A stretch of 64,000 bases of DNA, taken from IMG/VR virus record IMGVR_UViG_3300022866_000322, positions 1 to 64,000 of that record. One strand, written 5' to 3'. Numbering within the stretch: the first letter of the stretch is position 1; each line of letters begins with the position of its first letter. This document shows, piece after piece, positions 1,320 to 62,456 of the stretch. The position numbers and the translations under genes are program-made. The notes under the pieces were generated by a model. The model was given only the letters and a program-made list of their open reading frames with translations. It was not told the origin of the DNA and searched no databases.

Positions 1320-2450
1320 ATGTGGAGTAACCCAGTTACAATTGACAATGAGATTATGTCTATGGCAAAAGCTCTCGATTGTAATTGGGTAGGAGCAGTT
1401 AAAGTTAACGCACAGTCTGCATACGAGTATAATAACTGCCATAACAATGTTAGAATACACTCTAGTATATACGGCGGCAAGAAAGTAATTGGCTATTATT
1501 TTATAAAGGGGTTCAATGTTGTGCAGGCCATAAGACACAGTGTATGGCAAGATAACACGTTAGTAGACGTAACACCATATAAAGATAACAGAGAACACAT
1601 TATTTTTGCGTTAAGTTCAGACCAATCCAACGATTACTCGATACCTAACTGTTACTCTCAGTCTCTTGCTAAATATTTAAAACAGGAGAGTGACCGAATG
1701 TATTATGTATATCAAATAGTGGATCCGAGAAATAACCAACCATTTTATATCGGCAAAGGTACAGGTGACAGAGCAACAACACATTTACGGACTGTGTCCG
1801 ACACTAGAAATGTTTACAAAGAAAATAAAATCGCGAGTATAAGAAAGTCCGGAGCAGAGCCAGTAATTGAATACATTGCTGAAAACATATTAGACGAGGA
1901 ATTAGCGTATGATATCGAGGCCACTGCAATTAAAAAGTATGGTAGAAAAGGATATGACAAGAATGGCATATTAACCAATATATGTCCTGATGCCCGCCCA
2001 CCTAATCAGAAAGGTAGAACATACGAAGAAATATACGGGGTTAACAAAGCAAAGCAACAACGAGAATTAAGATCACGCCTTCAGAAAGAGAGAGGTGGAT
2101 ATGGCCCTAAGCAACACAGCATCGAAACACGAAAACGATTTAGTGAATTAAATTCTGGTGCCGGAAACCCAATGTACGGTAAAACACAAAAAGAAAGTAC
2201 CAAGGCATTAATTAGCAAAAAAGCAAAGTTGCGAATCGGTAAAAAAAATAAAAATAGCCACACTTACAGACTAACATCTCCAACAGGGGATGAGCACATA
2301 TTATACGGCGGTGAATCTACTGATTTCTGTAAAACACATAATTTAAGTTGGAGTACTCTTAAAATGCAAATTGAAAAGAAATGGGGTATTCCAAAAAAAG
2401 GCAAAACTAAAGGTTGGAAGTTAGAAGACTTAACAGCTACTAGAACATAA
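1320..2450 (+). CDS. Free-standing GIY-YIG (LEM3-like) homing endonuclease with NUMOD3, fused in frame to an unknown N-terminal domain; internal start at 1698
   Basis: YVYQIVDPRNNQPFYIGKG and LTN motifs; NPMYGKTQKESTKALISKK NUMOD3-like; internal AGGAG RBS and ATG at 1698. Confidence 0.85.
   Translation: MWSNPVTIDNEIMSMAKALDCNWVGAVKVNAQSAYEYNNCHNNVRIHSSIYGGKKVIGYYFIKGFNVVQAIRHSVWQDNTLVDVTPYKDNREHIIFALSSDQSNDYSIPNCYSQSLAKYLKQESDRMYYVYQIVDPRNNQPFYIGKGTGDRATTHLRTVSDTRNVYKENKIASIRKSGAEPVIEYIAENILDEELAYDIEATAIKKYGRKGYDKNGILTNICPDARPPNQKGRTYEEIYGVNKAKQQRELRSRLQKERGGYGPKQHSIETRKRFSELNSGAGNPMYGKTQKESTKALISKKAKLRIGKKNKNSHTYRLTSPTGDEHILYGGESTDFCKTHNLSWSTLKMQIEKKWGIPKKGKTKGWKLEDLTATRT
1662..1689 (+). 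promoter_or_regulatory. Hairpin with late-promoter motif in loop and RBS in 3' arm
   Basis: tctcttg (1662-1668) pairs with caggaga (1683-1689); TAAATA at 1670-1675. Confidence 0.6.
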
Positions 2451-4196: not shown

Positions 4197-4628
4197 ATGT
4201 CAAAGATTTTATTTTTTCTATTGTTTATTCCCACATTGTTATTCTCAGCTGATCTTCATCAGATGAACGAAAATGATCTGGCACTAGATATTACGAACTC
4301 AGACACAGTACAAAATGGTCGAGAGTGGTACGACAGACGTTGTTCCTTCTGTCATGGTGGCCAAGGCAAAGGTGGCAAAGGTCCTTGCTTAACATGTGGC
4401 AAGTTTACATACAGTTCAAATACCAACATGGGTATATTCACAACCATTAGTGTGGGCATTACCAATCAGAGTTTAGGCGGCACAATGGGTGCATTTGGTA
4501 CAACCATTGACGGTATGGATATAGTTGCTATTGTAACTTACTTACGGTCAGAAGAAAGACGCAGAATTGAGTCTGGTGAAATTAAAGATCCATACATTGT
4601 GCAAGAACAGATGGTCTTCCCGGAATAA
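4197..4628 (+). CDS. Periplasmic c-type cytochrome, cytochrome cL (MxaG/XoxG)-like
   Basis: Signal peptide, CSFCH heme motif, GKGP.L..KFTYSSNTNMGIFTTI, GTMGAFG distal Met. Confidence 0.75.
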   Translation: MSKILFFLLFIPTLLFSADLHQMNENDLALDITNSDTVQNGREWYDRRCSFCHGGQGKGGKGPCLTCGKFTYSSNTNMGIFTTISVGITNQSLGGTMGAFGTTIDGMDIVAIVTYLRSEERRRIESGEIKDPYIVQEQMVFPE

Positions 4629-4964: not shown

Positions 4965-5029
4965 TTGACGGCTTGTCCAAAAACATCTATAATACGTAGT
5001 ATATTAACTAGTAACAGCAAGGGGCTAAT
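4965..5029 (+). promoter_or_regulatory. Repeated early promoter/leader, copy 1
   Basis: TTGACG-17-TATAAT followed by acgtagtatattaactagtaa. Confidence 0.85.
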
Positions 5030-5201: not shown

Positions 5202-5261
5202 TTGACGGTTTGTCCAAAAACATCTATAATACTACGTATATTAACTAATAAGGAGCTAAAG
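5202..5261 (+). promoter_or_regulatory. Repeated early promoter/leader, copy 2
   Basis: TTGACG-17-TATAAT, gtatattaactaataaggagct. Confidence 0.85.
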
Positions 5262-5492
5262 ATGCAGTTAACAGTTAAAGAGTTTGTAAATTACTGCAAC
5301 GACTTTTACGGTATGGGTGGCTTATACGACATGGCCTTTACTAAAAAAGAAATAGCCCATGCAGTAGACATTTACTTTAGTCGCATGTCAGACCAAGTAA
5401 ATTGGGGCGGTGGTGATACTGTAGACCGTGAACGTGTTTACGAGATTATGCGTGAAATTTATACTTTTGAATACAAAGTGGAGGTAGCGTAA
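5262..5492 (+). CDS. Hypothetical early protein, paralogue of 41176..41403
   Basis: ATG 5262 after AAGGAG; F.NYC..FYG.GG.YD and WG.GD.VDRERV shared with paralogue. Confidence 0.75.
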   Translation: MQLTVKEFVNYCNDFYGMGGLYDMAFTKKEIAHAVDIYFSRMSDQVNWGGGDTVDRERVYEIMREIYTFEYKVEVA

Positions 5493-5665
5493 TGACCAAT
5501 AAAGAAATGGTACACTTTATTAATTCAATTGAGTACGATCTTATTTGTGCTGGTACAGAACAAGATAAGATGGACTTGCGTAAGAAATTAACTTTTAAAC
5601 GTGAACAACTTGAACGTGAAATTCAATTAGAACAGCATCACTTCGATACACAACTGTCTTACTAA
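5492..5665 (+). CDS. Small hypothetical protein (57 aa)
   Basis: TAATG overlap with previous gene, GGAGG RBS. Confidence 0.6.
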   Translation: MTNKEMVHFINSIEYDLICAGTEQDKMDLRKKLTFKREQLEREIQLEQHHFDTQLSY

Positions 5666-5674
5666 GAGGGCAAG

Positions 5675-5989
5675 ATGTACAAGTTTATAATTTATCAGAT
5701 GGAACGTGATAGTGACTTGTATCACAACAAGAGTTTTTATGGAAGAGATAGCCTGTTCTTCAACAAGGATCATGCAAGGCAGGCAATGGCTAAACGACAA
5801 TATAAAAGGGTGGCATGTATACACGCTCATAATTTAAACGAAGTGCGGCACAAGGCCACCACTTCAGGCTACTTGCTCGATCATGTAGCCAAATTAGAAA
5901 TTGGCTACATGATAGAAAGTGAAACATATGGCAATCAGTACATTGTTGCTAATGCCGGGTTTGACAGTTTGAACGAAATTATTTTATAA
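5675..5989 (+). CDS. Hypothetical protein
   Basis: ORF with GAGG RBS. Confidence 0.6.
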   Translation: MYKFIIYQMERDSDLYHNKSFYGRDSLFFNKDHARQAMAKRQYKRVACIHAHNLNEVRHKATTSGYLLDHVAKLEIGYMIESETYGNQYIVANAGFDSLNEIIL

Positions 5990-6004
5990 ACAAGGAGAAC
6001 CAGT

Positions 6005-6223
6005 ATGTCCAAAATTGCAGGAAGGTCAGACAAAGCAATCGAAGTATGCGGCGGCGATCAGTATTTACTGATACTGATGGCATCACAAAGGACTCGCGAG
6101 ATTGCACAAGGTGCCGAGCCTAGAGTTACGGAAATCCAAGACGAAAAGGCAGCCAGTACTGCTATTAGAGAGATCGAACAAGGTTTGTATACAGTGGATG
6201 AATATAATCAAGATTCTAAATAA
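6005..6223 (+). CDS. rpoZ: RNA polymerase omega subunit homologue
   Basis: DQYLLILMASQRTREI...EP.V...EKAASTAIREIEQGL parallels omega NRFDLVLVAARRARQ...DKTTVIALREIEEGL. Confidence 0.8.
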   Translation: MSKIAGRSDKAIEVCGGDQYLLILMASQRTREIAQGAEPRVTEIQDEKAASTAIREIEQGLYTVDEYNQDSK

Positions 6224-6236
6224 CAGGAGAAACATT

Positions 6237-6416
6237 ATGGCTAATTATGCTATGGCACCAAGAAAACGTTGGTATGTTGCAGAAGATGGTAAGGTAATTA
6301 CACAACCATTTCCTAATAATCAGTATCAATGTGAACTTATAATAACGCAGTTAAACAATGGGTTAGAAGAAACTGCACTTCGCAATCTAACTGTCGAATC
6401 GGAGGTAATTGAATAA
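6237..6416 (+). CDS. Hypothetical protein
   Basis: ATG 6237 after AGGAG (ORF-track start is overextended). Confidence 0.6.
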   Translation: MANYAMAPRKRWYVAEDGKVITQPFPNNQYQCELIITQLNNGLEETALRNLTVESEVIE

Positions 6417-6613
6417 TGACTGACGTTTTAGAGTTTATATATGAGTTAAAGAAAATCAAACACTCTATTCACCCCAACATGACTTTGCAGGAACAGGCAA
6501 TGATCAAAGAAGATATTGATAGACTCATTGATACATACAACTCAGTAGCTGATGATTATAATGCCTGGGGCAATCAAGAAGCACTCAAAATGACTTACAG
6601 GGAAACAACATGA
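6416..6613 (+). CDS. Hypothetical protein
   Basis: TAATG coupling, GGAGG RBS. Confidence 0.6.
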   Translation: MTDVLEFIYELKKIKHSIHPNMTLQEQAMIKEDIDRLIDTYNSVADDYNAWGNQEALKMTYRETT

Positions 6614-6695
6614 GCTTTAAAGAAATACTAAAAGCCGCAGAGCAAAGTACTCAAGACAGCTTGTATCAAATATATCTTTAAAAGGAGAAAACAAC

Positions 6696-6812
6696 ATGAA
6701 CAAAGATATGAACTTTGAAAACATGAACATCGAAGAAACAAAGAAAGAAGCAGAGCAAGGTCATGCCACGGCTAAACAATCTTTAAAAGGAATGCCCGGT
6801 GAATTTATATGA
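6696..6812 (+). pseudogene. Possible Sel1-repeat gene remnant
   Basis: AGGAG RBS; ...KKEAEQGHATAKQSL resembles a Sel1 repeat start; AQYNL fragment at 7125-7139. Confidence 0.35.
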
Positions 6813-6836
6813 GATACACAAAACAATGAGGAAAAA

Positions 6837-7115
6837 ATGAATATGTTTAAATATCCAGTCACTTTAACGAAAGATGGCGACACCATCTTGGCGACATTTC
6901 GGGATGTTCCAGAAGCCATTACTTTTGGTGCTGATAAAGAAGAGGCGTTACTCAATGCCGTTGATGCTTTAGAGGCTGGGTTATCTTTTTACGTTGAGGC
7001 GAATAAAACTCTACCCGTACCGAGCAAGGTCAAGCGCAACGAGGTGACGGTGTGCCCATCCGCTTTAGCGTGTGCAAAATTGGGTGTATACCAAGCCATG
7101 ACTGCGGATAGATAG
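6837..7115 (+). CDS. hicB: HicB-family antitoxin, N-terminal domain only (orphan)
   Basis: YPVTL..DGDTILATFRDVPEAITFG....EAL..A.DAL......Y......LPVPS; ends before a DNA-binding domain; no hicA nearby. Confidence 0.85.
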   Translation: MNMFKYPVTLTKDGDTILATFRDVPEAITFGADKEEALLNAVDALEAGLSFYVEANKTLPVPSKVKRNEVTVCPSALACAKLGVYQAMTADR

Positions 7116-7216
7116 CGGTCTGGTGCTCAATACAATTTAAGACCAGGAGAAGCTAGGGCAATCGAGAAGCACTTAAATACCTAGACTAAAAATTATTAAC
7201 CTTACTAAGTATTATT

Positions 7217-7528
7217 ATGCAGATATTATACAAAAAAGAACTAGAGCAATTGCTGGATAAAATTGCTACAGGAAAAACTGACGTTAACCGGCTCCAAGAG
7301 GACGAACTAGAGGAGTTGATGGACTACATTCACGAGCGAGCTGAGGAGTTGGATGATCCTGACTATGACGAGATTAAGCAGCAGTTACTCCAGTTGTTTG
7401 ACCTGCTCGGACATGTTATTGATAACAGGATTGAAGCGGAAGATAATGAAAAGTTTATAGACTCTATACGAGGAAGTATACAAAGAGGCAATTTTTACTT
7501 TGAATTGGGCAGTTTTATAGTGCATTAA
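7217..7528 (+). CDS. Hypothetical acidic protein
   Basis: ORF. Confidence 0.55.
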   Translation: MQILYKKELEQLLDKIATGKTDVNRLQEDELEELMDYIHERAEELDDPDYDEIKQQLLQLFDLLGHVIDNRIEAEDNEKFIDSIRGSIQRGNFYFELGSFIVH

Positions 7529-7634
7529 CTAAATATACCAAAATCAGTTAAACTGTCACATAACTACTCTCTTATTCCTTTAAATATCCTGTAGCCGCAA
7601 TTTAATCGCGGCTCATTAAATGGAGATATAAAAA

Positions 7635-7868
7635 ATGGAAATATTAGCCACAATCAAAACGTGGGCAGGTGAATTAGCTGAAGTAGTTGTTTCAGTCCTA
7701 GCATTAAGTATTGTTTTAGAACTATTAATGGGCAACTCAGCAATTCCGTTCTTGCCAACCCCAAGTGTTATCGGTAACGTGACAGATGTTGTTAACACAT
7801 TGGGTGGTCAAGGTCTAGTAGGCTTGTTAGCTGTTTGGGTCTTGTATACCGTTTGGAAAGCTAAGTAA
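7635..7868 (+). CDS. Small membrane protein
   Basis: Two hydrophobic segments; GGAG RBS. Confidence 0.7.
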   Translation: MEILATIKTWAGELAEVVVSVLALSIVLELLMGNSAIPFLPTPSVIGNVTDVVNTLGGQGLVGLLAVWVLYTVWKAK

Positions 7869-7895
7869 TCGCTTTTTAAATTTTTCAAGTTAATC

Positions 7896-7924
7896 AATAA
7901 ACCCGCTGGAGCGGGTTTATTTTT
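7896..7924 (+). terminator. Intrinsic terminator
   Basis: aataaacccgc-tgga-gcgggtttattttt. Confidence 0.75.
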
Positions 7925-7938
7925 GACTAAATATTAGT

Positions 7939-8286
7939 ATGAGAATAACAGACATTATACGCACTGTGCTAGACATAGTTGACCAAGCAGAACAGCCAGC
8001 ACAGGAACCTATGATTGCTATCGCTGTCAGTGAGCCAGACCAAGAGACCATGGACATGCAAACACTAGCTGGCATATTAAAAGTAGGCGATGATGGCGCA
8101 TGTGATGTCTGCGGACGTGATCCATGTGGTTGCGACAATGCAGGATATGCCAACGAGCCTAAGGAAATTATCGCTCCTATGCAAGCCGCATTTCCTTCAG
8201 GTGACGATGTACACAAGGCTAAGAACCCTGCAGACATTAGAACTGATGCAACCAGCATGTATCCAGATTACCAAGCAAGGAAATAA
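7939..8286 (+). CDS. Hypothetical late protein with CxxC-x3-CxC motif
   Basis: TAAATA-N5-ATG; CDVCGRDPCGC. Confidence 0.65.
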   Translation: MRITDIIRTVLDIVDQAEQPAQEPMIAIAVSEPDQETMDMQTLAGILKVGDDGACDVCGRDPCGCDNAGYANEPKEIIAPMQAAFPSGDDVHKAKNPADIRTDATSMYPDYQARK

Positions 8287-12021: not shown

Positions 12022-12270
12022 ATGGCAACCAACTTTGAAAAAAAACCAGGCAGACCTTTTGGCAATAAGGTAATAGTCCAGTACGACAATGTAGAAAAAG
12101 CTATGCGTAAACTAAAGAAAAAAGTTAGCGAAAGCGGAGTACTACAAACTTTACGCTCAAAAGAATCTTTTGAAAAACCCACTACAAGACGCAAGCGGAA
12201 ACATGCCGCCGCAGTTCGCAGATGGAAAAAGCAACTACTAGAAGAGCAGTTGCCTAAAAAGATGTACTAA
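12022..12270 (+). CDS. rpsU: Ribosomal protein bS21
   Basis: NVEKAMRKLKKKV...G.L..LR..E.FEKPT.RRKRK..AA.RR. Confidence 0.92.
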   Translation: MATNFEKKPGRPFGNKVIVQYDNVEKAMRKLKKKVSESGVLQTLRSKESFEKPTTRRKRKHAAAVRRWKKQLLEEQLPKKMY

Positions 12271-12513
12271 ATGCATATCCAGTGGGTCCTTCCACGTGCA
12301 AATGGAATACATGCAGTGGGATGGGCTCGCACTGAAATAGAATACGATGTTAGGACTTGGGCTGAAAAACACGATATAGATATCAAACACATTGGTATTA
12401 AGAACTGGTGTGTTCAATTGTGTTTGTCTACAGAACAAGACTATGTGGATTTTTTAGTATCATTTAATCCAGAACACTCCCGAAGTGAATCGTATGAACT
12501 AATAAGAGATTGA
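12271..12513 (+). CDS. Hypothetical protein
   Basis: Abuts rpsU stop. Confidence 0.5.
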   Translation: MHIQWVLPRANGIHAVGWARTEIEYDVRTWAEKHDIDIKHIGIKNWCVQLCLSTEQDYVDFLVSFNPEHSRSESYELIRD

Positions 12514-12543
12514 CATCTAGTCTTGTATCCTGTATAAATATAC

Positions 12544-12612
12544 TTGTAGTGCCGATTATCGGGCTACAACATCACAAGTCATAACTTGCTTAACATAAAG
12601 GAGAAAACTATG
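12544..12612 (+). promoter_or_regulatory. ROSE-like RNA thermometer leader of the sHSP gene
   Basis: 5' hairpin ttgtag..ccga-tta-tcgg.ctacaa; CTTGCTT (12585-12591) pairs with AAGGAG with bulged G. Confidence 0.55.
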
Positions 12613-13068
12613 ACATCATACAAACTTAGTACGACCAACCTTCCCGGATTTACTGCTTCACTTAATCGTCATGCCATCGGCTTTGACAACTTGTTTAATG
12701 AACTGACCCGAACACACTTGGGCAATTCAAAAGCAGATAATTATCCTCCATACAACATCATCAAAATTGACGAACACAACTGGGCGATCCAGGTTGCAGT
12801 TGCAGGGTTTGGTGAAGATGAGTTGAACATTGAATTCAAAAGCAATGTGTTGACTATCACCGGGGAGAAGCAGGAAGCAGAAGCAGAAGAACACGAATAC
12901 CTGCACAAAGGTATTAGTGCTCGCACATTCACTCGCACATTTACTCTCAACGAGAATGTTGAGATCAAAGGTGCAACAGTAGTAAATGGCATCCTGGCAG
13001 TCAGCTTAGAGCATGTTGTTCCGGACGAACAAAAGCCTAAAAAGATTGCAATTACCTTTACTAAGTAA
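12610..13068 (+). CDS. Small heat shock protein Hsp20/IbpA
   Basis: AIGFD, NYPPYNI, VAVAGF, YLHKGISARTF.RTF.L, NGILAVSL; start 12610 after AAGGAG. Confidence 0.95.
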   Translation: MTSYKLSTTNLPGFTASLNRHAIGFDNLFNELTRTHLGNSKADNYPPYNIIKIDEHNWAIQVAVAGFGEDELNIEFKSNVLTITGEKQEAEAEEHEYLHKGISARTFTRTFTLNENVEIKGATVVNGILAVSLEHVVPDEQKPKKIAITFTK

Positions 13069-13089
13069 TATAATATAGTTATAAACGCC

Positions 13090-13109
13090 GGGGGGAGGCA
13101 ACTCCCCCC
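13090..13109 (+). terminator. GC-rich hairpin
   Basis: ggggggag-gcaa-ctcccccc; weak U-tract. Confidence 0.5.
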
Positions 13110-13141
13110 ACTTACTAACTAGATGACCGAGAGTGTAAGCT

Positions 13142-13447
13142 ATGAGTGAAAAAACTGAAGTAAAACAATCTACAAAATCTAAAACAAGTATCAAACCACC
13201 TAATCTTTACAATGTAATCTACCTCAATGACAATAAGACCACAGTAGAGTTTGTTGTAGAGAGTCTGAAAGTAATTTTCCATCATAGTGAAGAAATAGCA
13301 AAAGAATTAACTGTTAAGATTCATAACGACGGTAGTAGCGTAGTAAAAACACTTACATATGAAGTTGCTGAGCAAAAAGGTGTAGAAGTAACAATGCTTG
13401 CTCGTAACAACGGATTCCCCCTCGAAGTTAAACTACAGCCAGCATAA
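13142..13447 (+). CDS. clpS: N-degron adaptor ClpS
   Basis: PNLYNVIYLNDNKTTVEFVVE.L...F, IH..G, E.AEQK, FPL. Confidence 0.93.
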   Translation: MSEKTEVKQSTKSKTSIKPPNLYNVIYLNDNKTTVEFVVESLKVIFHHSEEIAKELTVKIHNDGSSVVKTLTYEVAEQKGVEVTMLARNNGFPLEVKLQPA

Positions 13448-13455
13448 AAAATATT

Positions 13456-13989
13456 ATGGATATAATGTTAGATATTGAGACGTTAGGTACTCGTCCGCAG
13501 AGTGTCGTGTTGACTGTGGGTGCTGTTAAGTTTGACCCATACGCATCGGATGTGAATACAGACGACGGATTGTATGTTAGGATAGATGTAGACGAACAAA
13601 TAGCACTAGGCAGACATGTACACCAGGATGTAATTGATTGGTGGGGCAAGCAAGCAGAAGATGTTCGAGAAGAAGCCCTCGGTGATCACGAACGTGACAG
13701 TGTATCATCTTTTTTAGGAAAACTTAATAAGTTCCTAGTAGGGACTGATAACATATGGTGCCAAGGGCCTGCATTTGATGCAGTTATTCTTGAAGATTTG
13801 TATCGTGACATGGATACGCCCATGCCGTGGAACTTTTGGCAGATAAGAGATAGTCGTACATTGTTTAAAACTTTTGGAGATCCTAGAGATAAGGACGCTA
13901 AAGGTGCACACAATGCTTTAATAGATTGTTATTATCAAGCAACAGCAGTTCAACAAATTTATAAACAACAAGGATTGAAGAAACGATGA
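13456..13989 (+). CDS. DEDDh 3'-5' exonuclease (Rv2179c/DUF5051-like)
   Basis: MLDIETLG, FD.VILE, RDSRTL, HNAL.D. Confidence 0.88.
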   Translation: MDIMLDIETLGTRPQSVVLTVGAVKFDPYASDVNTDDGLYVRIDVDEQIALGRHVHQDVIDWWGKQAEDVREEALGDHERDSVSSFLGKLNKFLVGTDNIWCQGPAFDAVILEDLYRDMDTPMPWNFWQIRDSRTLFKTFGDPRDKDAKGAHNALIDCYYQATAVQQIYKQQGLKKR

Positions 13990-15888: not shown

Positions 15889-16707
15889 ATGCTAGGTAGA
15901 ATATGTGTGGCGTTATTGGTTTTTTTGTTAGTTGGTTGCGCCTCGACTAATCCAAAACTTGGCAGACCAGCTGAGCTTGCTGAAACCCCAGTCAAGAAAC
16001 ATTTAATTAATTTCCCTGCAATTAAAGGCGGACAGCCTGTGACAGTTGCAATATACAGTTTCCAAGATAAGACTGGACAACGTAAACCAGCAGATAACAT
16101 TGCCAACATCAGTACAGCAGTAACACAAGGTGCAGAAGTATACTTAATAGATGCACTAATGGCACTAGCAGATGGTGAGTTTTTTGATGTTGTAGAGCGC
16201 AATGGCCTGGACAACCTAATCAAAGAAAGACAGATTATACGTAATGCACGAAGTGAGTTTGATGAGAAACAGAAATTGGGTGCAATGAAGTTTGCTGGTA
16301 TTATAATCGAAGGCGGCATTATTGGTTATGATACAAACAAATTTACAGGTGGTATTGGCGCCAGGGTTATGGGCATTGGTGCACAACAAGAATGGCGTGT
16401 AGATGTAGTCACAATAGGGCTTAGAGCGGTAAGTGTACTGTCGGGAGAAGTATTGCTAAATGTGAGCACCGAAAAGACGATTTTAAGCACTAGTCTTGGC
16501 ATAAACGTGTTTAAATTCTACGATCAAGGCACACAAGTTCTAGAGGTAGAGTCAGGTACCAGTACCAATGAACCAGTTAATTATGCAGTAAAACAGGCAG
16601 TTGAACAAGCAGTAATTGAGTTAACCAAAGAAGGAAAACGTAAAAAACTATGGGATTACACTATGCTAGATGATAAATCAACAGGATGGAGTAATTACGT
16701 AGACTAG
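15889..16707 (+). CDS. csgG: Curli secretion channel CsgG/HfaB-family lipoprotein
   Basis: Lipobox LVGC; VAIYSFQDKTGQRKP, STAVTQGA, VVER.GL.NL.KERQIIR, EGGIIGYD. Confidence 0.93.
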   Translation: MLGRICVALLVFLLVGCASTNPKLGRPAELAETPVKKHLINFPAIKGGQPVTVAIYSFQDKTGQRKPADNIANISTAVTQGAEVYLIDALMALADGEFFDVVERNGLDNLIKERQIIRNARSEFDEKQKLGAMKFAGIIIEGGIIGYDTNKFTGGIGARVMGIGAQQEWRVDVVTIGLRAVSVLSGEVLLNVSTEKTILSTSLGINVFKFYDQGTQVLEVESGTSTNEPVNYAVKQAVEQAVIELTKEGKRKKLWDYTMLDDKSTGWSNYVD

Positions 16708-16816
16708 CGTATAACATACATATTTAATGATAGCAACTTATTATTTAAATACTAACGTGCGATAATACTAAGATATTGGCACGTATAATGGGGACCACCC
16801 AAAAGGAGCGACACAC

Positions 16817-17515
16817 ATGACAAGGATAGCATTAGCATTCATGTCTTTATTAATAAGCAGTCCGGCATGGGCTGACAACTTGATCTATATTGATCAGGTT
16901 GGATCATCAGCCACAATCACTATAGATCAAGACGGTTCTGGAAACAGCGTTGGCGCAAGCGGTGACGACAGCAAGAGCGATGGCGCCAGCACCATATTAG
17001 ACATTGACCAAGTTGGATCAAGCAATGCATTAGATTACGATGTTTACGGCGACAACGCCAGTGTAACAGCAACCACTAATGGCAATAGTTCAGACATTGA
17101 CATACAGGTAGGTACTACAGGAGGCACCAACGGTGGCAGTGATGATGTTACAATCAGCATCACCAATCCAGGCAACACAAACACTGTTGGTGTAAACGTT
17201 GGCGCTACACAAAGTCTTGTTGACGATGTTAACGTAGACATTGACCTAACCAGCGGCAGTGGCAGTAATACTATAACAGTAACTGAGGATTCCACAGCAA
17301 CTAGTATCCTAGACAAAACCACAGACATTGACATTGACGGCAGTACCAACACCGTTACAGTTACCCACAGTGGTGCTTCACAACACGACACTCTGCTTAA
17401 TCATACCGGCAGCAGTTCAACTCTAAGTATTACTCAATCAGGTGCAGAGGCGAGTACAGTAGATGTTAACACAAATGGTTCAACTTCTAGCGTTACTATT
17501 AACGTTTCAGATTAG
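16817..17515 (+). CDS. Secreted curlin-repeat-like beta-solenoid protein
   Basis: Signal peptide; repeated IDQxGxxN / xxGxxN units rich in S, T, G, N, D. Confidence 0.75.
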   Translation: MTRIALAFMSLLISSPAWADNLIYIDQVGSSATITIDQDGSGNSVGASGDDSKSDGASTILDIDQVGSSNALDYDVYGDNASVTATTNGNSSDIDIQVGTTGGTNGGSDDVTISITNPGNTNTVGVNVGATQSLVDDVNVDIDLTSGSGSNTITVTEDSTATSILDKTTDIDIDGSTNTVTVTHSGASQHDTLLNHTGSSSTLSITQSGAEASTVDVNTNGSTSSVTINVSD

Positions 17516-18530
17516 TACGTGTTATGCAGGGATCGGTACAGTTGAAAAACAAACCGGCCCTGCACAACTTACACGCGATAATGACAAAATCACAGTAGAA
17601 AAAGATCTGGGTGTAGAGATGCTGGACACAATAAGCACCGCCGACGGTATTATTGGTATTGGCTTCAATGATGATACCAAAATACAAATTGAAAAACACA
17701 GCAAATTAATCATTGATGATTTCATATATGATGCCGCTGACCCTACAAAAAGTAAGCTCAAGATGAAAGTGGGCTTGGGCACAGTTAAGTATGCATCAGG
17801 TAAGATTGCTAAAAACAACAGACAAAGCGTAGACATACAAACACCAACAGCACGTATTGGTGTGCGTGGTACTGCATTCAGCATGACCGTAGACGAAATA
17901 GGCAGGAGTCTTGTTATACTGTTGCCCAACGCAGATGGCACTGTGGGAGAGATATCTGTTGAAAGCGATATAGGGCAGGTAATACTTAACCAGGCATATC
18001 AAGCAACAATGGTCAACACACGAGAAAATGTACCAACACCACCTGTCCTATTGGACCTAGATGTAAATCAAATTAACAACCTGTTAATTGTACAAAAGCC
18101 AAAAGAAAAAGAGGACGAGACTCAGGCTGAACGTGAACAGTCCATATTAGATTTTAATGAACTTGACGTTAATCTTCTTGACAACAATGAATTAGATGAA
18201 GACGAGTTAGTGTTCACAAGACTAGACTTTAACCTACTTGATGTTGATATGTTGGGTAATATTTTAGATTTAATGAATGCAAAACTGCTTAAAGAGGTAG
18301 ACTCGTTCTCAACTAATCCTATTAGGCCAGGAGCATATGAACAAGGTAACACACAGATTGTGCTGGATGGTGAGTGGCTTATATATAGAAACGTTGACGG
18401 TAGGATTTTTAGCATTACACTTGACCAAAACAGCAGTACACAAATGAACTTGAATCAAGCAGGTAGCCCAATAACATTACACACAACGGAGAACGCAAGT
18501 GACACGGTTATTACTATTAATCAAAATTAG
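17463..18530 (+). CDS. FecR-domain periplasmic protein
   Basis: D.I.T.DG...I.F.D.T, L.IDDF.YD, TPTA.IGVRGTAF. Confidence 0.85.
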   Translation: MLTQMVQLLALLLTFQISTCYAGIGTVEKQTGPAQLTRDNDKITVEKDLGVEMLDTISTADGIIGIGFNDDTKIQIEKHSKLIIDDFIYDAADPTKSKLKMKVGLGTVKYASGKIAKNNRQSVDIQTPTARIGVRGTAFSMTVDEIGRSLVILLPNADGTVGEISVESDIGQVILNQAYQATMVNTRENVPTPPVLLDLDVNQINNLLIVQKPKEKEDETQAEREQSILDFNELDVNLLDNNELDEDELVFTRLDFNLLDVDMLGNILDLMNAKLLKEVDSFSTNPIRPGAYEQGNTQIVLDGEWLIYRNVDGRIFSITLDQNSSTQMNLNQAGSPITLHTTENASDTVITINQN

Positions 18531-18837
18531 TTTAGTTTTACTATTAGGTGCATGTGTACCGCATCATGTTTATGATCAACCACACTCATACTATGATGGT
18601 ACCATGAAAATTGTAATCATGGATCCAGAAACCATACAAACCACATGGGAACAGTATACTGGAAAAACCACAAAGGTTAAAGGATGGGCTCGCTGGAGTG
18701 TAACAGAAGAAGGCAAGAAATGGTGTGAGGTATTTGTACCTTATGTGCAGCCAGATCTTGACATGCGTGTGTGGTTGCACGAAATGCGTCACTGCACAGA
18801 AGGACACTTCCACAAAGGGCCAGCAGAGTATGAATAA
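18499..18837 (+). CDS. Small lipoprotein with HExxH motif
   Basis: Lipobox LGAC; WLHEMRHC. Confidence 0.6.
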   Translation: MTRLLLLIKISLVLLLGACVPHHVYDQPHSYYDGTMKIVIMDPETIQTTWEQYTGKTTKVKGWARWSVTEEGKKWCEVFVPYVQPDLDMRVWLHEMRHCTEGHFHKGPAEYE

Positions 18838-19603
18838 ACTGCTACTATTACTATCGTTAATTATTAGCACAGCAAGTGCTGATAACTTAATATCTATTGA
18901 CCAAGTAACCAGCGGAAACTCTAATAGCATAACGGTCACTGTGGATGGTAGTGATAACGAAATTGATTACAGTTTTGGTGGTGCCAGTAATACTGTGGCT
19001 ATAGATCAGAAGGGCGATGATGCTTATGTTGGGTATACAGCTACATGGGGCAGTGGTGCTGGATGGGGAGGCGACCTAGACGGTGACTCCAACGATATGG
19101 ACATTAAACAGTTATGCAACCAATTAGCATGCGAAGGCGACAGGTTTGAATTCCATGTTGCTGGTAACAACAACAGTATTAAAATAGGGCAGGGATATCA
19201 TGTGCAGGCCGACGGTACTTTTCAATCACCTGACAGTGTAGAATACGGTGGCCACAATATAAGATTGGATGTACACGGATCAAACAACAGTTTCATAGGA
19301 AGTCAACGAGCAGGCGGCGACAACCATAGTAATATTACTAACATTTATGGTAGCTATAATGACGTTTACGCAAGACAAGAATACAACTTTGACAAATCTA
19401 TAGACCTAACAATATCAAACAGCAACAATGATGTAGATATCATACAAGGTGGAAGTGCTAGTCATTCAGCAACAATTTCCCTGTCAGGCACATACGGAAC
19501 AGATTTAGATTTGACACAATACAGTAGCACAGCACAAACATATAGCCTATCGCAATCATGTGCGACAGTAGGCGGATGTTCTGTGTCAGTTACCCAAAAC
19601 TAA
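18830..19603 (+). CDS. Second secreted curlin-repeat-like protein
   Basis: Start 18830 gives signal peptide MNKLLLLLSLIISTASA; IDQ, GxxN repeats. Confidence 0.72.
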   Translation: MNKLLLLLSLIISTASADNLISIDQVTSGNSNSITVTVDGSDNEIDYSFGGASNTVAIDQKGDDAYVGYTATWGSGAGWGGDLDGDSNDMDIKQLCNQLACEGDRFEFHVAGNNNSIKIGQGYHVQADGTFQSPDSVEYGGHNIRLDVHGSNNSFIGSQRAGGDNHSNITNIYGSYNDVYARQEYNFDKSIDLTISNSNNDVDIIQGGSASHSATISLSGTYGTDLDLTQYSSTAQTYSLSQSCATVGGCSVSVTQN

Positions 19604-19624
19604 ATACCTAGTCAAGGAAAAAAC

Positions 19625-21715
19625 ATGAAAAAATGGTTAGTGGCGTTGATCGCCCTGGGTGCGGTATTGAGTATTAGGTGGACGGATCCGTGGATAGTAG
19701 AAGTTATCCGCCTCAAAGCACTGGACACACATCAACGTAGTGTCCCACAAGAAACAATTCAGTTAGACAGCGACATTCCTATTGCTGTGGTTAGAATAGA
19801 CAACGATGATATTGACCGCAACGGACAGTGGCCTTGGCCTCGTGACATACTAGCCAATGAAATTATACGACTATACGAGAATGGTGCGGGGCTTGTGGTA
19901 CTGCCCATGCTGTTTGCTGAGGAAGATCGCTTTGGTGGCGACCCTGCATTTATAGATTTGTTACAGAATGCACCTGTTATTGTTGGGCAAGTTCCTGCGC
20001 TGAGAGGCAAGGGTGTACCAGTACCACGTGGCATTGCTATTAAGGACAACAGCACAACAGGCAAAGCATGGGAAGATTGGCTATTCCGTTATGGACAAGC
20101 AATAGGTCCAACAAAAGAAATTGGTGAGAGTGCTTGGGGCGTTGGTATGATGTTGAGCAGTACAGAAGCTGATGGAGTTGTACGTAAACTTCCGCTTGTT
20201 GTTCGCATACCCAGCAAAGAGCCTACAGACAGCGCACAGATATTTCCCAGCATACCCACAGAGATTGTGCGTGTACTGGCAGGTGACATCAGTTACCAAA
20301 TGAAGCTGGGTGACGCAGGTGTGGAAGCAGTGCGTATCCCACAGTTTAGCACAATTAAGACAGACGCAAACGGTAGCATCTACGTAGACTACAAATACAA
20401 AGTACAGGAGTTTGCATTTGACAATTTGCCCAACTTCAATGGCGGTATTGTTATACTAAGTTTAACAGCGTCGGGGTTGGACAACACCATTGCAACTCCA
20501 GTTGGCAGAAGTTATGATCATGATTTAATTGCCGCAAGTGTTTACACAATAGTTAATGGTATCAACATAAGTCGCCCATGGTGGTCAGACCTTGGTGAAC
20601 TGGCAACAGCACTGGCAATAAGTTTGGTAGTAATGATACTGGTACTTAAACTAAACTGGTACTTTGGTGTTGGTGGCATTGTGGTATCATTAGGTGGCAT
20701 ATTCTACGGTAGTAGGACAGCATACTTGAACGATGGCTATTTGCTGGATTGGAGTTTCCCAATATTTGCAGTGTTCCTCACATGGAGTATAGCGGCATTC
20801 CTGCGCTTCATGGATGAGTTTAGACAAAAGCAAGAAATCAAAAAACAGTTTGCAGGCTATGCAAGTCCTACAGTGGTACGTATGCTTCAAGAGAATCCAG
20901 GTCTAATCAAGGATGGCATGAAGCGTGAAATCAGTATTTGTTTTAGTGACCTACGTGGCTTTACTCCACTAGGTGAAAGTTTTGGCGATGATGTAAAAGG
21001 ACTTACCAACTTGATGAACGGCTACATGGATGCTATTACGCAACCAGTACTGGATCGTGACGGAATGATCATAAAGTACATTGGTGATGCGTCAATGCAT
21101 GTACACAATGCACCCAACGATGATCCACGCCACCATCACTCAGCAGTTAAAACAGGATTGGACATGCTTACAGCAGTGGAAAAGTTCAATGATAAAATTG
21201 TAGCAGAAGGAAGACCACCGATTGGCATGGGTGCTGGCATTAATAGCGGACTAGGTTACTTGGGTGAAATGGGTAGTACGTCAAGACACAGTTATGATGT
21301 GTTAGGCGATGCTGTTAGTACTGCGGCACGTATTGAGAGCAAGTGTAAAGAATATGGATGTTTGTTACTTGTAGGCGAAACCACATACGATGCAACCAAG
21401 AATGATTTCTTTTACTTAAAGGTAGACGAACTTGCAGTAAAAGGTAAAACTGTGGGCATACGCATCTACACTGTACTAGGTGAAAAAGAACAAACAACTG
21501 CATGGCAAGCAAGCAAACAGTTACACATCGAAATGCATCAATATTATAGAGAGCAGAGTTTTAACAAAGCAATCACTTTATGCAACAAACTAAAAGGCTC
21601 ATTTGATGGACAAATAGATGGGTATTATGATATGTGGATTGAACGCTGTGAATATATGCTAACACAAGATCTACCTGCTGCCTGGGACGGAATATTTGTG
21701 GCTACAACCAAGTAG
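19625..21715 (+). CDS. CHASE2-domain class III adenylate/guanylate cyclase
   Basis: GQWPWPR and DGVVRK (CHASE2), TM bundle, FSDLRGFT, KYIGDA, GDAVSTAARIES, VKGK. Confidence 0.95.
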   Translation: MKKWLVALIALGAVLSIRWTDPWIVEVIRLKALDTHQRSVPQETIQLDSDIPIAVVRIDNDDIDRNGQWPWPRDILANEIIRLYENGAGLVVLPMLFAEEDRFGGDPAFIDLLQNAPVIVGQVPALRGKGVPVPRGIAIKDNSTTGKAWEDWLFRYGQAIGPTKEIGESAWGVGMMLSSTEADGVVRKLPLVVRIPSKEPTDSAQIFPSIPTEIVRVLAGDISYQMKLGDAGVEAVRIPQFSTIKTDANGSIYVDYKYKVQEFAFDNLPNFNGGIVILSLTASGLDNTIATPVGRSYDHDLIAASVYTIVNGINISRPWWSDLGELATALAISLVVMILVLKLNWYFGVGGIVVSLGGIFYGSRTAYLNDGYLLDWSFPIFAVFLTWSIAAFLRFMDEFRQKQEIKKQFAGYASPTVVRMLQENPGLIKDGMKREISICFSDLRGFTPLGESFGDDVKGLTNLMNGYMDAITQPVLDRDGMIIKYIGDASMHVHNAPNDDPRHHHSAVKTGLDMLTAVEKFNDKIVAEGRPPIGMGAGINSGLGYLGEMGSTSRHSYDVLGDAVSTAARIESKCKEYGCLLLVGETTYDATKNDFFYLKVDELAVKGKTVGIRIYTVLGEKEQTTAWQASKQLHIEMHQYYREQSFNKAITLCNKLKGSFDGQIDGYYDMWIERCEYMLTQDLPAAWDGIFVATTK

Positions 21716-22945: not shown

Positions 22946-24181
22946 ATGCAAATAGGTTTTATAGGGTTAGGTAAATTAGGGCTTCCATGTGCTGAAGCAA
23001 TGGCCACACAGTATTCTGTGACTGGCTACGATATTTACAACAAAACAAGTGACACCATAAAAATATCACCCTCACTGGAAGGTGCAGTTAAAGGCAAAGA
23101 CATTGTATTCGTAGCAGTGCAAACTCCACACGATCCTGTGTACGACGGAAGTCGACCTATTACACATTTAGCAAACAAAGACTTTGACTATACTATAGTT
23201 AAACAAGTTTTAACAGACATAAACCAACATGTTGGACAGGAAACACTAGTAGTGCTAATCAGCACAGTATTACCCGGCACTACAAGGACACAGTTGCGTG
23301 ATTGTGTGTCAGAAGCACGTTTTGTTTACAACCCCTACCTTATTGCTATGGGTAGCGTTGCATGGGATATGGTTAATCCTGAAATGGTTATTATTGGTAC
23401 AGAAGATGGATCAGAAACAGGTGACGCAAAAGAACTTATTAACTTTTATAAGCCGTTAATGGAAAATGATCCCAAGTATAATGTTGGCACATGGGATGAA
23501 GCAGAAAGCATAAAGATATTTTACAACACATTCATCAGCACAAAAATTGGCCTGGTAAACATGATACAGGATGTTGCAGTGAAGAACGGTAACATTGATG
23601 TTGATGTGGTTACAGAAGCATTAGCAGGTAGCACACTGCGTATTGTAAGTCCCAAGTACATGAAAGCAGGCATGGGAGATGCAGGACCTTGCCACCCAAG
23701 AGACAACATTGCACTGCGTTGGTTAGCAGAAAGATTAGATCTCGGATACGATATATTTGACACTGTGATGCATGCTAGGGAAAAACAAGCAGAAAATGTT
23801 GCCAGTTACCTAACAGCACTGCAAAAGAAAAACAACATGCCGGTACGCATCATGGGCAAAGCATACAAGCCCGACGTTGATATACTGGATGGCAGTTATA
23901 GTTTGTTGATTGGGTATTACCTGGAAAAACAAGGTACAGACTTTGCTTATGTTGATCCGCTTACTAACGATATAGCAACCGATACCGACCAACCTGTTAT
24001 AGCATTCCTGGCGCACAACAGACAAGTCACATATGGATATACTGGAAATAAAAAGCGACAAGAATTCTATTGTGATGTTGCTACAGGAAGCATCATAGTT
24101 GATCCATGGAGAACATATCCGAAAATAGACAACAACTATAAAGTAATACATTATGGAAACACTAGATTTAAAACAGTTTAA
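22946..24181 (+). CDS. UDP-glucose/GDP-mannose dehydrogenase family
   Basis: GFIGLGKLG, AVQTP, STVLPGT, AESIKIFYN, GPCHPRD, AYKP. Confidence 0.92.
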   Translation: MQIGFIGLGKLGLPCAEAMATQYSVTGYDIYNKTSDTIKISPSLEGAVKGKDIVFVAVQTPHDPVYDGSRPITHLANKDFDYTIVKQVLTDINQHVGQETLVVLISTVLPGTTRTQLRDCVSEARFVYNPYLIAMGSVAWDMVNPEMVIIGTEDGSETGDAKELINFYKPLMENDPKYNVGTWDEAESIKIFYNTFISTKIGLVNMIQDVAVKNGNIDVDVVTEALAGSTLRIVSPKYMKAGMGDAGPCHPRDNIALRWLAERLDLGYDIFDTVMHAREKQAENVASYLTALQKKNNMPVRIMGKAYKPDVDILDGSYSLLIGYYLEKQGTDFAYVDPLTNDIATDTDQPVIAFLAHNRQVTYGYTGNKKRQEFYCDVATGSIIVDPWRTYPKIDNNYKVIHYGNTRFKTV

Positions 24182-42242: not shown

Positions 42243-42328
42243 AAACGGTTGACATAAGAAGTAAATGGTAGTATAATCGAAGATGTATTATTTGTTTTTT
42301 AATTTTAATTTTTTAGGAGTTATTGACT

Positions 42329-42670: not shown

Positions 42671-42687
42671 TACACTACACACCTAGT

Positions 42688-42709
42688 AAAAGGGCCTCTG
42701 GGCCCTTTT
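42688..42709 (+). terminator. Intrinsic terminator
   Basis: aaaagggcc-tctg-ggccctttt. Confidence 0.75.
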
Positions 42710-42725
42710 CTAGTAAATACAAGTT

Positions 42726-42990
<265 letters not shown>

Positions 42991-43015
42991 GCAGGGCTTT
43001 CGGGCCCTGCTTTTT
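42991..43015 (+). terminator. Intrinsic terminator of tmRNA
   Basis: gcagggc-tttcgg-gccctgc-ttttt. Confidence 0.85.
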
Positions 43016-50291: not shown

Positions 50292-50476
50292 GAACACCTA
50301 GATTCTATGTCGCTGATGAAATCAACAACTGGAGTGTCCGCAGTCCTGATAGTCTTGGTTTTTGGAAATGTGTGAGACCTATGAGTTGGCCCGGGATCAA
50401 TATCAGAAAACGATTAAAAATGGCCTGGTGGGTATTTACAGGTAAGGGTGATGTTCTTATGTGGGAGATTGAATAA
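50288..50476 (+). CDS. Hypothetical protein
   Basis: ATGA coupling. Confidence 0.55.
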   Translation: MRTPRFYVADEINNWSVRSPDSLGFWKCVRPMSWPGINIRKRLKMAWWVFTGKGDVLMWEIE

Positions 50477-61909: not shown

Positions 61910-62456
61910 AACACTACTATACTGCACAGGATACAGTACGTCAGATCTTGATTGGGAAAAACGTTGGCGTAGATGGTACAACTATCACAAACAACAAGGC
62001 CTACAGTTTGATCAACTTTTAATAGTGGACAATGGTAGTCCAGAGCTTCCAGGCTGGGGCGATAACAGAATAATTTACAATCTTGATCGACCTTGGTTTG
62101 CAAACAAGGATATCATAATATATCGTTACGAAGATACGATAGATACTGATGACCACCTAATCAGATCTGCACAAGTTGCTAAAGAATATACCACACTGTA
62201 TGGTTTTGACAAATTGCTACACATGGAATCTGATGTGTACATTTTAAGCAAACGATTGGCTAAATTTATTAATGAACAAGACTTGGTAACTTTCCCTGGT
62301 GAACTATGTGCAGATTACATAGGAGACAACTACGGCCAGACTCATGACGTACTACCAAACAATATAGATTATGCTACTGGAATTGGTGAAGATTGGGACG
62401 ATGTACACCAAAAACATCTTGACAAGAAGCGTAATTACACATATAATAGAACTTAA
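61902..62456 (+). CDS. GT-A fold glycosyltransferase-like protein
   Basis: LLIVDNGS, LLHMESD. Confidence 0.55.
   Translation: MSKTLLYCTGYSTSDLDWEKRWRRWYNYHKQQGLQFDQLLIVDNGSPELPGWGDNRIIYNLDRPWFANKDIIIYRYEDTIDTDDHLIRSAQVAKEYTTLYGFDKLLHMESDVYILSKRLAKFINEQDLVTFPGELCADYIGDNYGQTHDVLPNNIDYATGIGEDWDDVHQKHLDKKRNYTYNRT

What the first reader, a model, noticed from the sequence alone, without database searches (positions are those of the whole stretch)
6005..6223. Phage RNA polymerase omega homologue lacking the ppGpp-binding MAR N-terminus
Seen: the omega core is recognisable but the N-terminus is MSKIAGRSD rather than MARVT. Known: in proteobacteria the omega N-terminal residues form ppGpp site 1 with beta-prime. 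It lies in an early-promoter gene run. Inference: it may replace host omega and blunt the stringent response or shift sigma preference.
Basis: partly seen in the sequence, partly recalled or inferred. Interest (0 to 1): 0.7.

Follow-up and report, generated by a model that had tools for sequence, protein, structure and literature searches.

The report
Phage copy of RNA polymerase omega
A giant T4-like phage from a salt lake carries its own copy of omega, the smallest subunit of bacterial RNA polymerase, in a form that has lost the N-terminal Met-Ala-Arg with which proteobacterial omega helps bind the starvation signal ppGpp. Similar phage omegas are common in uncultured aquatic phages, and I found no paper describing them.

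Summary
Window 6005-6223 (+) is a 72-aa gene with a Shine-Dalgarno site. It scores above the curated cut-offs of Pfam RNA_pol_Rpb6 and TIGR00690 rpoZ, and its predicted fold matches solved omega chains (TM 0.75-0.78). Its start is fixed as MSKIAGRSD, not MAR.

The window is the first 64 kb of a 221-kb fragment of a T4-like jumbo myophage. The phage has gp23, portal and a gp55-like late sigma but no beta or beta-prime, so it must use host RNA polymerase. The gene is fourth in an operon behind a repeated near-consensus sigma-70 promoter cassette. It is under purifying selection (dN/dS 0.11-0.38).

It belongs to a large, metagenome-only radiation of short omega-like proteins. Some sit on phage contigs of 270-387 kb. 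Two sister phages (capsid protein 70-78% identical) keep MAR, and this clade lost it once.

Most likely it docks on host beta-prime as a substitute omega that cannot complete ppGpp site 1. Binding is not shown, because the complex prediction failed its control. Since sister phages keep MAR, blinding the polymerase to ppGpp cannot be the general purpose of phage omegas.

I found no cultured phage, PHROG family or paper with such a gene.

The parts
6005..6223 (+). Phage omega (RpoZ-like) gene, 72 aa, with start MSKIAGRSD and no MAR
   Evidence: ORF. Pfam and TIGRFAM scores above their cut-offs. Predicted fold matches solved omega chains. dN/dS is 0.11-0.38 against four homologues 59-72% identical in protein.
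5992..5997 (+). Shine-Dalgarno AAGGAG, 7 nt before the ATG
   Evidence: Read directly from the sequence.
5202..5230 (+). Near-consensus sigma-70 promoter (TTGACG-17-TATAAT) inside a repeated promoter and leader cassette. It is the likely start of the operon that contains omega.
   Evidence: No terminator-like site was found on the + strand between it and omega. Function is inferred, not shown.
4965..4993 (+). Second copy of the same promoter cassette, one short gene further upstream
   Evidence: In salt-lake contigs the same cassette is joined to other downstream genes.
5961..5990 (+). Candidate promoter directly before omega (TTGACA-18-TATAAA). Its TATAAA also resembles a T4-type late -10 element. 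Doubtful, because a transcript starting here would lack most of the Shine-Dalgarno site.
   Evidence: Consensus match only.
5262..5989 (+). Three small upstream genes of the same operon: 76 aa (phrog_7799, function unknown), 57 aa and 104 aa
   Evidence: The 104-aa gene lies upstream of omega, with at most one short gene between, in the related contigs L011-L014 and L016-L017.
6237..6613 (+). Two small downstream genes (59 aa and 65 aa) that travel with omega in most relatives. Neither has a family match.
   Evidence: In L015, omega and the 59-aa gene sit together in a different genomic context.

Best explanation
The gene encodes a phage-made omega subunit that is expressed early and docks on the host's beta-prime through the conserved omega core (the GGDQY...ASQRTRE helix and the TAIREIEQG helix). 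It would join newly assembled or omega-free host RNA polymerase, the only polymerase this T4-like phage has.

The generic benefit is probably the one known for cellular omega, namely help with beta-prime folding and core stability and a bias towards the primary sigma factor. That would favour the phage's many sigma-70-type early promoters.

In this clade the N-terminal Met-Ala-Arg has been replaced by a tip of variable length. MAR supplies omega's half of ppGpp site 1 in proteobacteria. Polymerase carrying this omega should therefore lack a working site 1 and be partly uncoupled from the host's stringent signal.

Shown: identity as an omega, absence of MAR, dependence on host polymerase, the early operon, and purifying selection. 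Inferred: binding to beta-prime, replacement of host omega, and loss of site 1.
For: Family membership and fold.

Dependence on host polymerase:
- No beta or beta-prime Pfam match in this genome, in the complete 364.6-kb sister genome G001, or in G008.
- T4 core genes are present, including a gp55-like late sigma.
- Strong sigma-70 promoters are about five times more frequent than in shuffles and concentrate in this region.

Selection and conservation:
- dN/dS is 0.11-0.38.
- The columns that are invariant across viral omegas are the family's core: G17, R29, G36, A53 and E56.

The N-terminus:
- All six clade members lack MAR. Their tips differ in length (MSKIAG, MIS, MLI, MISKMIS, MIRYFLT) before a conserved R-S-[DEQ]-x-A-I.
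- The clade is nested with support 99/83 among MAR-bearing viral omegas, which points to a single loss on a long stem branch.

The role of MAR in ppGpp binding is established knowledge (Ross 2013; Zuo 2013; Hauryliuk 2015) and is restated in PMC6416229.

A proteobacterial host, probably of Burkholderiales type, is suggested by the beta-type two-piece tmRNA, by the best cellular matches of the phage's S21, and by kinship with phages of OM43 and SAR11.
Against: - Binding is unproven. Complex prediction scored 0.72, but an unrelated control protein scored 0.79, so the tool gave no verdict.
- The sister phages G001 and G008 and 29 of the 150 best cluster representatives keep a conserved MARITS-like start. 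The general role of phage omega is therefore not ppGpp blinding, and the loss here could be neutral.
- A conserved Arg and a Lys in the new tip might still reach the ppGpp phosphates.
- ppGpp site 2, formed with DksA, would remain.
- The host is not identified.
- There is no expression evidence for the gene. The two metatranscriptome runs that share words with the region do not cover it.
- It is not known whether omega exchanges on polymerase that is already assembled.
Confidence: 0.45

Rival explanations
1. It is a generic omega supply. The phage tops up omega to keep host polymerase assembled and stable, and biased towards sigma-70, while host gene expression is shut down. The N-terminus does not matter for this role, and the loss of MAR is neutral drift with no selected effect on ppGpp signalling.
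For: Many viral omegas, including those of the two sister jumbo phages, keep MAR. MAR has been lost repeatedly across the radiation: at least 5 changes are forced by well-supported branches, and parsimony gives 22. The tip varies in length within the clade. The same phage carries other small spare parts of host machines, namely S21, ClpS, HSP20 and a tmRNA.
Against: Where MAR is kept, it is kept very strictly across proteins that are only 30-40% identical overall. The tip is therefore not generally free to drift. The clade sits on a long stem branch (1.04 changes per site), which suggests a functional shift.
Confidence: 0.3
2. It is an omega mimic used as an adaptor or a decoy. It takes the omega site, or binds a protein that normally binds omega, in order to bring a phage factor to the polymerase or to keep a host factor away. 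The small conserved neighbour genes are candidate partners.
For: Omega is a known docking point for a regulator: GafA of the RcGTA gene transfer agent binds it (abstract of PMC9638019, listed). Omega travels with unannotated genes of 58-61 aa in most relatives, and with the 59-aa gene into a different context in L015. The clade has its own sequence signatures and a long stem branch.
Against: No neighbour is always present. The 58-aa gene is missing in this window and the 59-aa gene is missing in L011-L014. None has a family match. Nothing was tested directly.
Confidence: 0.12
3. It is a decaying or hitch-hiking host gene with no function in infection.
For: It lies in a hypervariable islet of small early genes where gene content changes between near-identical phages.
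Against: dN/dS is well below 1 across homologues 59-72% identical in protein. The reading frame is intact in every relative. No bacterial genome among 185,579 species representatives carries the viral signature [SV]TAIREIE[QA] in an omega, so this is not a recent capture. Hundreds of distinct viral-type clusters exist.
Confidence: 0.04

Closest known systems
Bacterial RNA polymerase omega subunit (RpoZ) of Proteobacteria, such as E. coli and Vibrio cholerae omega
   Same: Same family by HMM and the same predicted helical fold. It is 31-33% identical over 63-65 residues, and both conserved core segments are retained.
   Different: It is encoded by a phage, not next to gmk and spoT. It is 72 aa and lacks the acidic C-terminal tail of E. 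coli omega. MAR is replaced: extending the alignment to the N-terminus puts I4-A5 at the positions of E. coli A2-R3, with three extra residues in front. No cellular genome has its TAIREIEQ signature.
MAR-bearing omegas of sister T4-like jumbo phages (G001, 364.6 kb, complete; G008, 270 kb) and other IMG/VR contigs
   Same: They are also phage-encoded, of similar length, and share the TAIREIEQG-type helix. The capsid proteins of these phages are 70-78% identical to this phage's.
   Different: They start MARITS. They are only 37-40% identical to this omega and fall in other omega subclades.
Phage-encoded ribosomal protein S21 of pelagiphages and related marine phages
   Same: This is an analogy, not homology: a virus carrying a small peripheral subunit of a host machine that it otherwise borrows. 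This phage carries an S21 as well.
   Different: It belongs to a different machine and a different protein family.
T4-type host-polymerase modifiers (gp55/gp33 late sigma system, AsiA/MotA, RpbA, Alt/Mod)
   Same: They share the strategy of re-tooling host RNA polymerase. A gp55-like gene is present in this genome.
   Different: None of them is a homologue of a core subunit. Replacing a core subunit has not, to my knowledge, been described for a phage.
RPB6/RpoK homologues of giant eukaryotic viruses
   Same: They belong to the same Pfam family and are virus-encoded.
   Different: Those viruses encode a complete polymerase of their own. This phage lineage has no beta or beta-prime.

Membership tests
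RNA polymerase omega / RPB6 family (Pfam PF01192; TIGR00690 rpoZ) | Sequence match above the curated family threshold | tested here: met
   PF01192 scores 36.9 bits against a cut-off of 26. TIGR00690 scores 31.2 bits against 23.6. Two narrower NCBIfam equivalogs (NF001579 and NF001589) scored below their cut-offs.
RNA polymerase omega / RPB6 family (Pfam PF01192; TIGR00690 rpoZ) | Omega fold: helices carrying the two conserved segments | tested here: met
   The AlphaFold2 model has pLDDT 85.9 with helices at 3-14, 19-34, 49-58 and 64-70. All 50 best Foldseek PDB matches are omega chains, with TM up to 0.78 and rmsd 1.6-1.9 A. This rests on a predicted structure only.
RNA polymerase omega / RPB6 family (Pfam PF01192; TIGR00690 rpoZ) | Binds beta-prime in the polymerase core | tested here: inconclusive
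   Complex prediction with E. coli beta-prime residues 340-942 and 1131-1407 scored 0.72, but one unrelated control scored 0.79. The tool's verdict was 'no answer'. Biochemistry is needed.
Proteobacterial omega that forms ppGpp site 1 | N-terminal Met-Ala-Arg directly before helix 1 | tested here: not met
   The start is MSKIAGRSD. The relatives start MISRSD, MLIRSE, MISKMISRSQ, MISRSQ and MIRYFLTRSQ.
Proteobacterial omega that forms ppGpp site 1 | Binds ppGpp together with beta-prime | not testable with these tools
   This needs binding or transcription assays with reconstituted polymerase.
Cellular rpoZ locus | Chromosomal context (typically gmk-rpoZ-spoT in Proteobacteria) | tested here: not met
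   The neighbours are small phage ORFs without family matches, lying between ribonucleotide reductase, a cell-wall hydrolase and a cytochrome c on one side and S21, HSP20 and ClpS on the other.
Virus-type omega radiation (uncharacterised, metagenome-only) | Groups with omegas found on viral contigs rather than with cellular omegas | tested here: met
   The clade (support 97/99) is nested (99/83) with P0010, P0022, P0042 and V_L018. The 19 viral-type clusters sampled contain no named bacterial genome, and their longest contigs reach 360-387 kb.

The most novel reading that the evidence does not exclude
Aquatic jumbo T4-like phages carry a large, so far undescribed family of virus-encoded omega subunits that replace the host's omega in its RNA polymerase. 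Lineages such as this one have shed the MAR tip so that the hijacked polymerase no longer senses ppGpp at site 1. Phage early transcription could then continue in starved hosts under stringent control. This would be the first case of a phage swapping a core subunit of the host polymerase.
Probability: 0.25. Interest if true: 0.8.

Novelty: new variant of a known kind. Interest (0 to 1): 0.62.

Why it matters
Phages are known to re-tool host RNA polymerase with sigma factors, anti-sigma factors, ADP-ribosylation and inhibitors. To my knowledge, and in the literature I could search, none is known to supply a replacement for a core subunit.

If the phage omega enters host polymerase, it offers a natural experiment on what omega does, a question that is still debated. 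It also bears on how much ppGpp site 1 matters in vivo, because nature supplies matched MAR and MAR-less versions in sister phages.

It would also extend a wider theme. Large marine and lake phages carry small plug-in parts of host machines: S21 for the ribosome, tmRNA, ClpS, and now omega.

Tried and rejected
**Searches that found nothing useful**
- Megablast and tblastn of the region and of the protein against 50,697 GenBank phage records gave no match.
- tblastn with two MAR-type viral omegas hit only records that look like host contamination: Salmonella contigs, 1.5-kb 'phage' fragments, enterobacterial rpoZ inside Campylobacter phage assemblies, and 'Acinetobacter phage MD-2021a' contigs of 240 kb annotated rpoZ.
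- PHROGs has no family for the protein.
- A scan of 185,579 bacterial and archaeal genomes for the viral signature found no omega.
- Alignment A2 was too diverse for a viral-contig scan.

**Tests that were not informative**
- Complex prediction with E. coli beta-prime fragments and ppGpp gave no verdict. I do not use it either way.
- The two RNA-seq runs that share words with the region cover neighbouring pieces only, not omega.
- Several contigs that carry relatives were too short to say anything about context.

**Other stringent-response or polymerase genes in the 221 kb held**
- No DksA/TraR zinc finger, no Sigma70_r2 and no HD_4.
- One MazG. I treat it as circumstantial at most, because published work on cyanophage MazG does not support ppGpp as its substrate (my recollection).

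**Literature**
- Seven full-text searches found no report of a phage-encoded omega. The search was aimed at the MAR motif.
- In the Melnitz, marine jumbo phage and 'moraphage' papers I looked for 'omega' as a term and found no omega-subunit mention.

**Idea rejected**
- That omega pairs with a phage multisubunit polymerase: no beta or beta-prime was found in this genome or in the complete sister genome.

Full report
**1. The observation**

Window 6005-6223 (+) is an ORF of 72 codons. AAGGAG lies 7 nt before its ATG. The five codons open upstream contain no possible start codon, so the product begins MSKIAGRSD.

The protein passes the curated thresholds of Pfam RNA_pol_Rpb6 (36.9 bits against 26) and TIGR00690 rpoZ (31.2 against 23.6). 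A sequence search of the PDB returns omega chains only. The best is Vibrio cholerae omega at E 3e-5, and E. coli omega aligns from query residue 11 to chain residue 9.

An AlphaFold2 model built on 11 homologues has mean pLDDT 85.9. Its 50 best Foldseek matches in the PDB are all omega subunits inside polymerase complexes, with TM 0.75-0.78 and rmsd 1.6-1.9 A over 63-65 residues for E. coli. Contigs from two independent salt-lake runs, from 2017 and 2018, carry the gene without a single difference.

**2. The genome it sits in**

The window is the first 64 kb of an IMG/VR virus record of 221,342 bp, 40% G+C, which CheckV estimates to be 63% complete.

- The record encodes a T4 gp23-type capsid protein, a portal, gp46/gp47 and a gp55-like late sigma.
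- It shares a CHASE2-cyclase with Methylophilales phage Melnitz (53% identity) and Pelagibacter phage HTVC008M.
- No beta or beta-prime domain is detectable in it. None is found in a complete sister genome with terminal repeats (G001, 364,576 bp) or in a 269,730-bp sister contig (G008).
- The capsid proteins of those two phages are 70% and 78% identical to this phage's, against 35% for Melnitz.

Like other T4-type phages, as stated for Melnitz in PMC9004378, this lineage must therefore transcribe with the host polymerase.

**3. Promoters and the operon**

Near-consensus sigma-70 promoters (at least 11 of 12 positions) number 44 in the genome, against about 9 in shuffles. Twenty-five of them lie on the + strand in the first 67 kb.

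Eight of them belong to a repeated cassette of about 55-60 nt that combines promoter, leader and ribosome-binding site. Two copies lie at 4965 and 5202, just upstream of omega. No terminator-like site on the + strand separates 5202 from the gene. Omega is thus the fourth gene of an apparent early operon.

A further match ends 15 nt before the ATG (5961-5990). It is doubtful because a transcript from it would lose the Shine-Dalgarno site.

**4. Host**

Three indirect lines point to a proteobacterium, probably of Burkholderiales type:
- a two-piece tmRNA that scores best with Rfam beta_tmRNA (140.9 bits);
- the 80 best cellular matches of the phage's S21, which are almost all Burkholderiales;
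- kinship with phages of OM43 and SAR11.

The Melnitz paper warns that phage tmRNAs need not match the host's, so this remains an inference. Omegas of Comamonadaceae in the same search begin MARITVEDCL.

**5. Relatives of the gene**

Six metagenomic proteins (63-96% identical over the aligned part) and four IMG/VR contigs form its clade. None has MAR. Their tips are MIS, MLI, MISKMIS, MIRYFLT or MSKIAG, followed by a conserved R-S-[DEQ]-x-A-I.

In this window the inner Met of the longer form has become Ile, so the three extra residues are certainly translated here.

Pairwise dN/dS is 0.11-0.38, which indicates purifying selection.

The gene order 104 aa, 58 aa, omega, 59 aa, 61 aa, 102 aa recurs with single-gene losses. 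In one contig, omega and the 59-aa gene sit in another context. In phages whose flanking genes are 96-100% identical to this window, omega is only 63% identical. This marks a recombining islet of small early genes.

**6. The wider family**

A profile search of 1.84 billion cluster representatives found 3,148 proteins at E <= 0.001 and 149 at E <= 1e-10. The 150 best divide as follows:
- 48 begin like cellular proteobacterial omegas (MAR-x-T-[VI]-[EQ]);
- 29 begin with MAR followed by another continuation, mostly MARITS;
- 73 have no MAR.

The last two groups are short, with a median of 78-79 aa. Every one of the 19 such clusters I sampled comes only from metagenomes. Their contigs reach 359,982 and 386,764 bp and are full of co-oriented ORFs without family matches. 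By contrast, the one cellular-type cluster I sampled is full of named Comamonadaceae genomes.

No bacterial or archaeal species genome has an omega with the viral [SV]TAIREIE[QA] signature. No cultured phage record carries a genuine copy, and PHROGs has no such family.

In a maximum-likelihood tree (81 columns, so resolution is weak overall) the window clade is well supported (97/99). It lies on a long stem of 1.04 changes per site. It is nested, with support 99/83, among MAR-bearing viral omegas, so MAR was most simply lost once on that stem. Across the tree the MAR state needs at least 5 changes on supported branches. Some 'no MAR' calls in metagenomic proteins may be start-codon errors. For the window clade I checked the DNA.

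**7. How it most likely works**

Established knowledge: omega binds beta-prime and aids its folding and core assembly. Loss of omega shifts sigma usage. In Proteobacteria the omega N-terminus (Ala2 to Thr5) and beta-prime form ppGpp site 1, and deleting residues 2-5 abolishes the site-1 effect in vitro (Ross 2013; Zuo 2013). The MAR motif is used as a marker of this function (Hauryliuk 2015, as cited in PMC6416229).

This protein keeps the omega core but not the tip. Extending the alignment to the N-terminus puts I4 and A5 in the places of A2 and R3, with three more residues in front. The model predicts that helix 1 starts earlier, although confidence there is low.

My best reading (confidence 0.45) is a substitute omega for host polymerase that cannot complete site 1. 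Binding itself I rate at about 0.7.

The complex prediction does not help. It scored 0.72 in three runs, but an unrelated 77-residue control scored 0.79, so the tool gave no verdict.

Whether the loss of MAR is adaptive is open. MAR is kept strictly in many viral omegas, including those of both sister phages, so omega's general value to these phages lies elsewhere. Site 2, formed with DksA, would stay intact. R7 and K3 might still approach the phosphates. The rival explanations are generic supply with neutral loss (0.30), adaptor or decoy (0.12) and relic (0.04).

**8. Comparison and novelty**

It is a member of the omega/RPB6 family by sequence and by predicted fold. It fails the one feature that defines the ppGpp-binding proteobacterial subclass. 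It is not in a cellular rpoZ context.

Functionally it resembles phage S21: a viral copy of a peripheral subunit of a borrowed machine. Among T4-type polymerase modifiers it would be a new class. I found no description of phage-encoded omega in seven full-text searches or in three relevant papers. IMG's automatic annotation does already name such proteins 'omega subunit'.

I therefore rate it a new variant of a known kind, with interest 0.62.

Noticed in passing
window 4965-5020, 5202-5260, 41112, 41893, 46485, 46905, 48513 (also 66919 in the genome, outside the window): A repeated cassette of about 55-60 nt combines a near-consensus sigma-70 promoter, a conserved leader and a ribosome-binding site (TTGACn...TATAATAcgta...GTATATTAACTAGTAAGGAGCT). 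In salt-lake contigs the same cassette is joined to different downstream genes. It resembles the mobile promoter-early stem-loop cassettes described for T4-type phages, and it may drive the gene shuffling seen around omega.
   Followed up: partly
window 42675-43013 (+): A two-piece (permuted) tmRNA gene with the tag ANENSYFEEFALAA. It scores 140.9 bits with Rfam beta_tmRNA, and a 12-of-12 sigma-70 promoter lies at 42249-42277. Similar genes are known in Melnitz-like phages.
   Followed up: partly
window 5675-8286 compared with L011-L014: This is a mosaic islet. The flanking genes are 96-100% identical between phages, but omega is 63% identical, the 65-aa gene 47% and the 103-aa gene 69%. A HicB-like gene (6837-7115) and the 57-aa and 59-aa genes are present or absent depending on the phage.
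   Followed up: partly
window 4197-4628 (+): A phage-encoded c-type cytochrome (Pfam Cytochrome_CBB3 and Cytochrom_C) with a hydrophobic N-terminus. It is 100% conserved in the related contigs L011-L014.
   Followed up: no
window 1320-2450 (+): A GIY-YIG/NUMOD3 homing-endonuclease-like gene lies between the ribonucleotide reductase small subunit and glutaredoxin. It is absent from the same place in L003, L004 and L011-L013.
   Followed up: partly
window 12022-13989 (+): A run of host-machine accessory genes: ribosomal protein S21, HSP20, ClpS and an Rv2179c-like 3'-5' exoribonuclease. The best cellular matches of the S21 are almost all Burkholderiales.
   Followed up: partly
window 15889-21715 (+): A curli secretion component CsgG, a FecR-like protein and a 696-aa CHASE2 plus adenylate/guanylate cyclase protein. 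The cyclase is 53% identical to the one in phage Melnitz.
   Followed up: no
window 27628-28932, 44001-45206, 60725-61909 (+): Three radical-SAM domain proteins lie in the early region, together with a UDP-glucose dehydrogenase at 22946-24181 and an ATP-dependent DNA ligase at 50476-51849.
   Followed up: no
window 62483-62921 (+): A tRNA cluster: Ser with the unusual anticodon ACT, Thr (TGT) and Glu (TTC). A 12-of-12 promoter precedes it at 62419-62447.
   Followed up: no
genome G000 81012-81221 and about 198354-198557 (outside the window): A MazG-family pyrophosphohydrolase and a gp55-like late sigma factor. No DksA/TraR, Sigma70_r2 or HD_4 domain was found in the 221 kb held.
   Followed up: partly
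L107 16095-16565 (contig of 359,982 bp): Another jumbo-sized contig with a MAR-less omega also carries a weak HD_4 match (the RelA/SpoT-type ppGpp hydrolase domain) about 6 kb downstream. RF-1 and PTH2 domain genes lie upstream. This may hint that such phages interfere with alarmone signalling.
   Followed up: no
GenBank phage records hit: Several records labelled as phages contain enterobacterial or Acinetobacter rpoZ and look like host contamination or bacterial contigs. Examples are Campylobacter phages A11a and A18a, 'Acinetobacter phage MD-2021a', and Escherichia and Salmonella 'phage' fragments of 1.5-1.7 kb.
   Followed up: no
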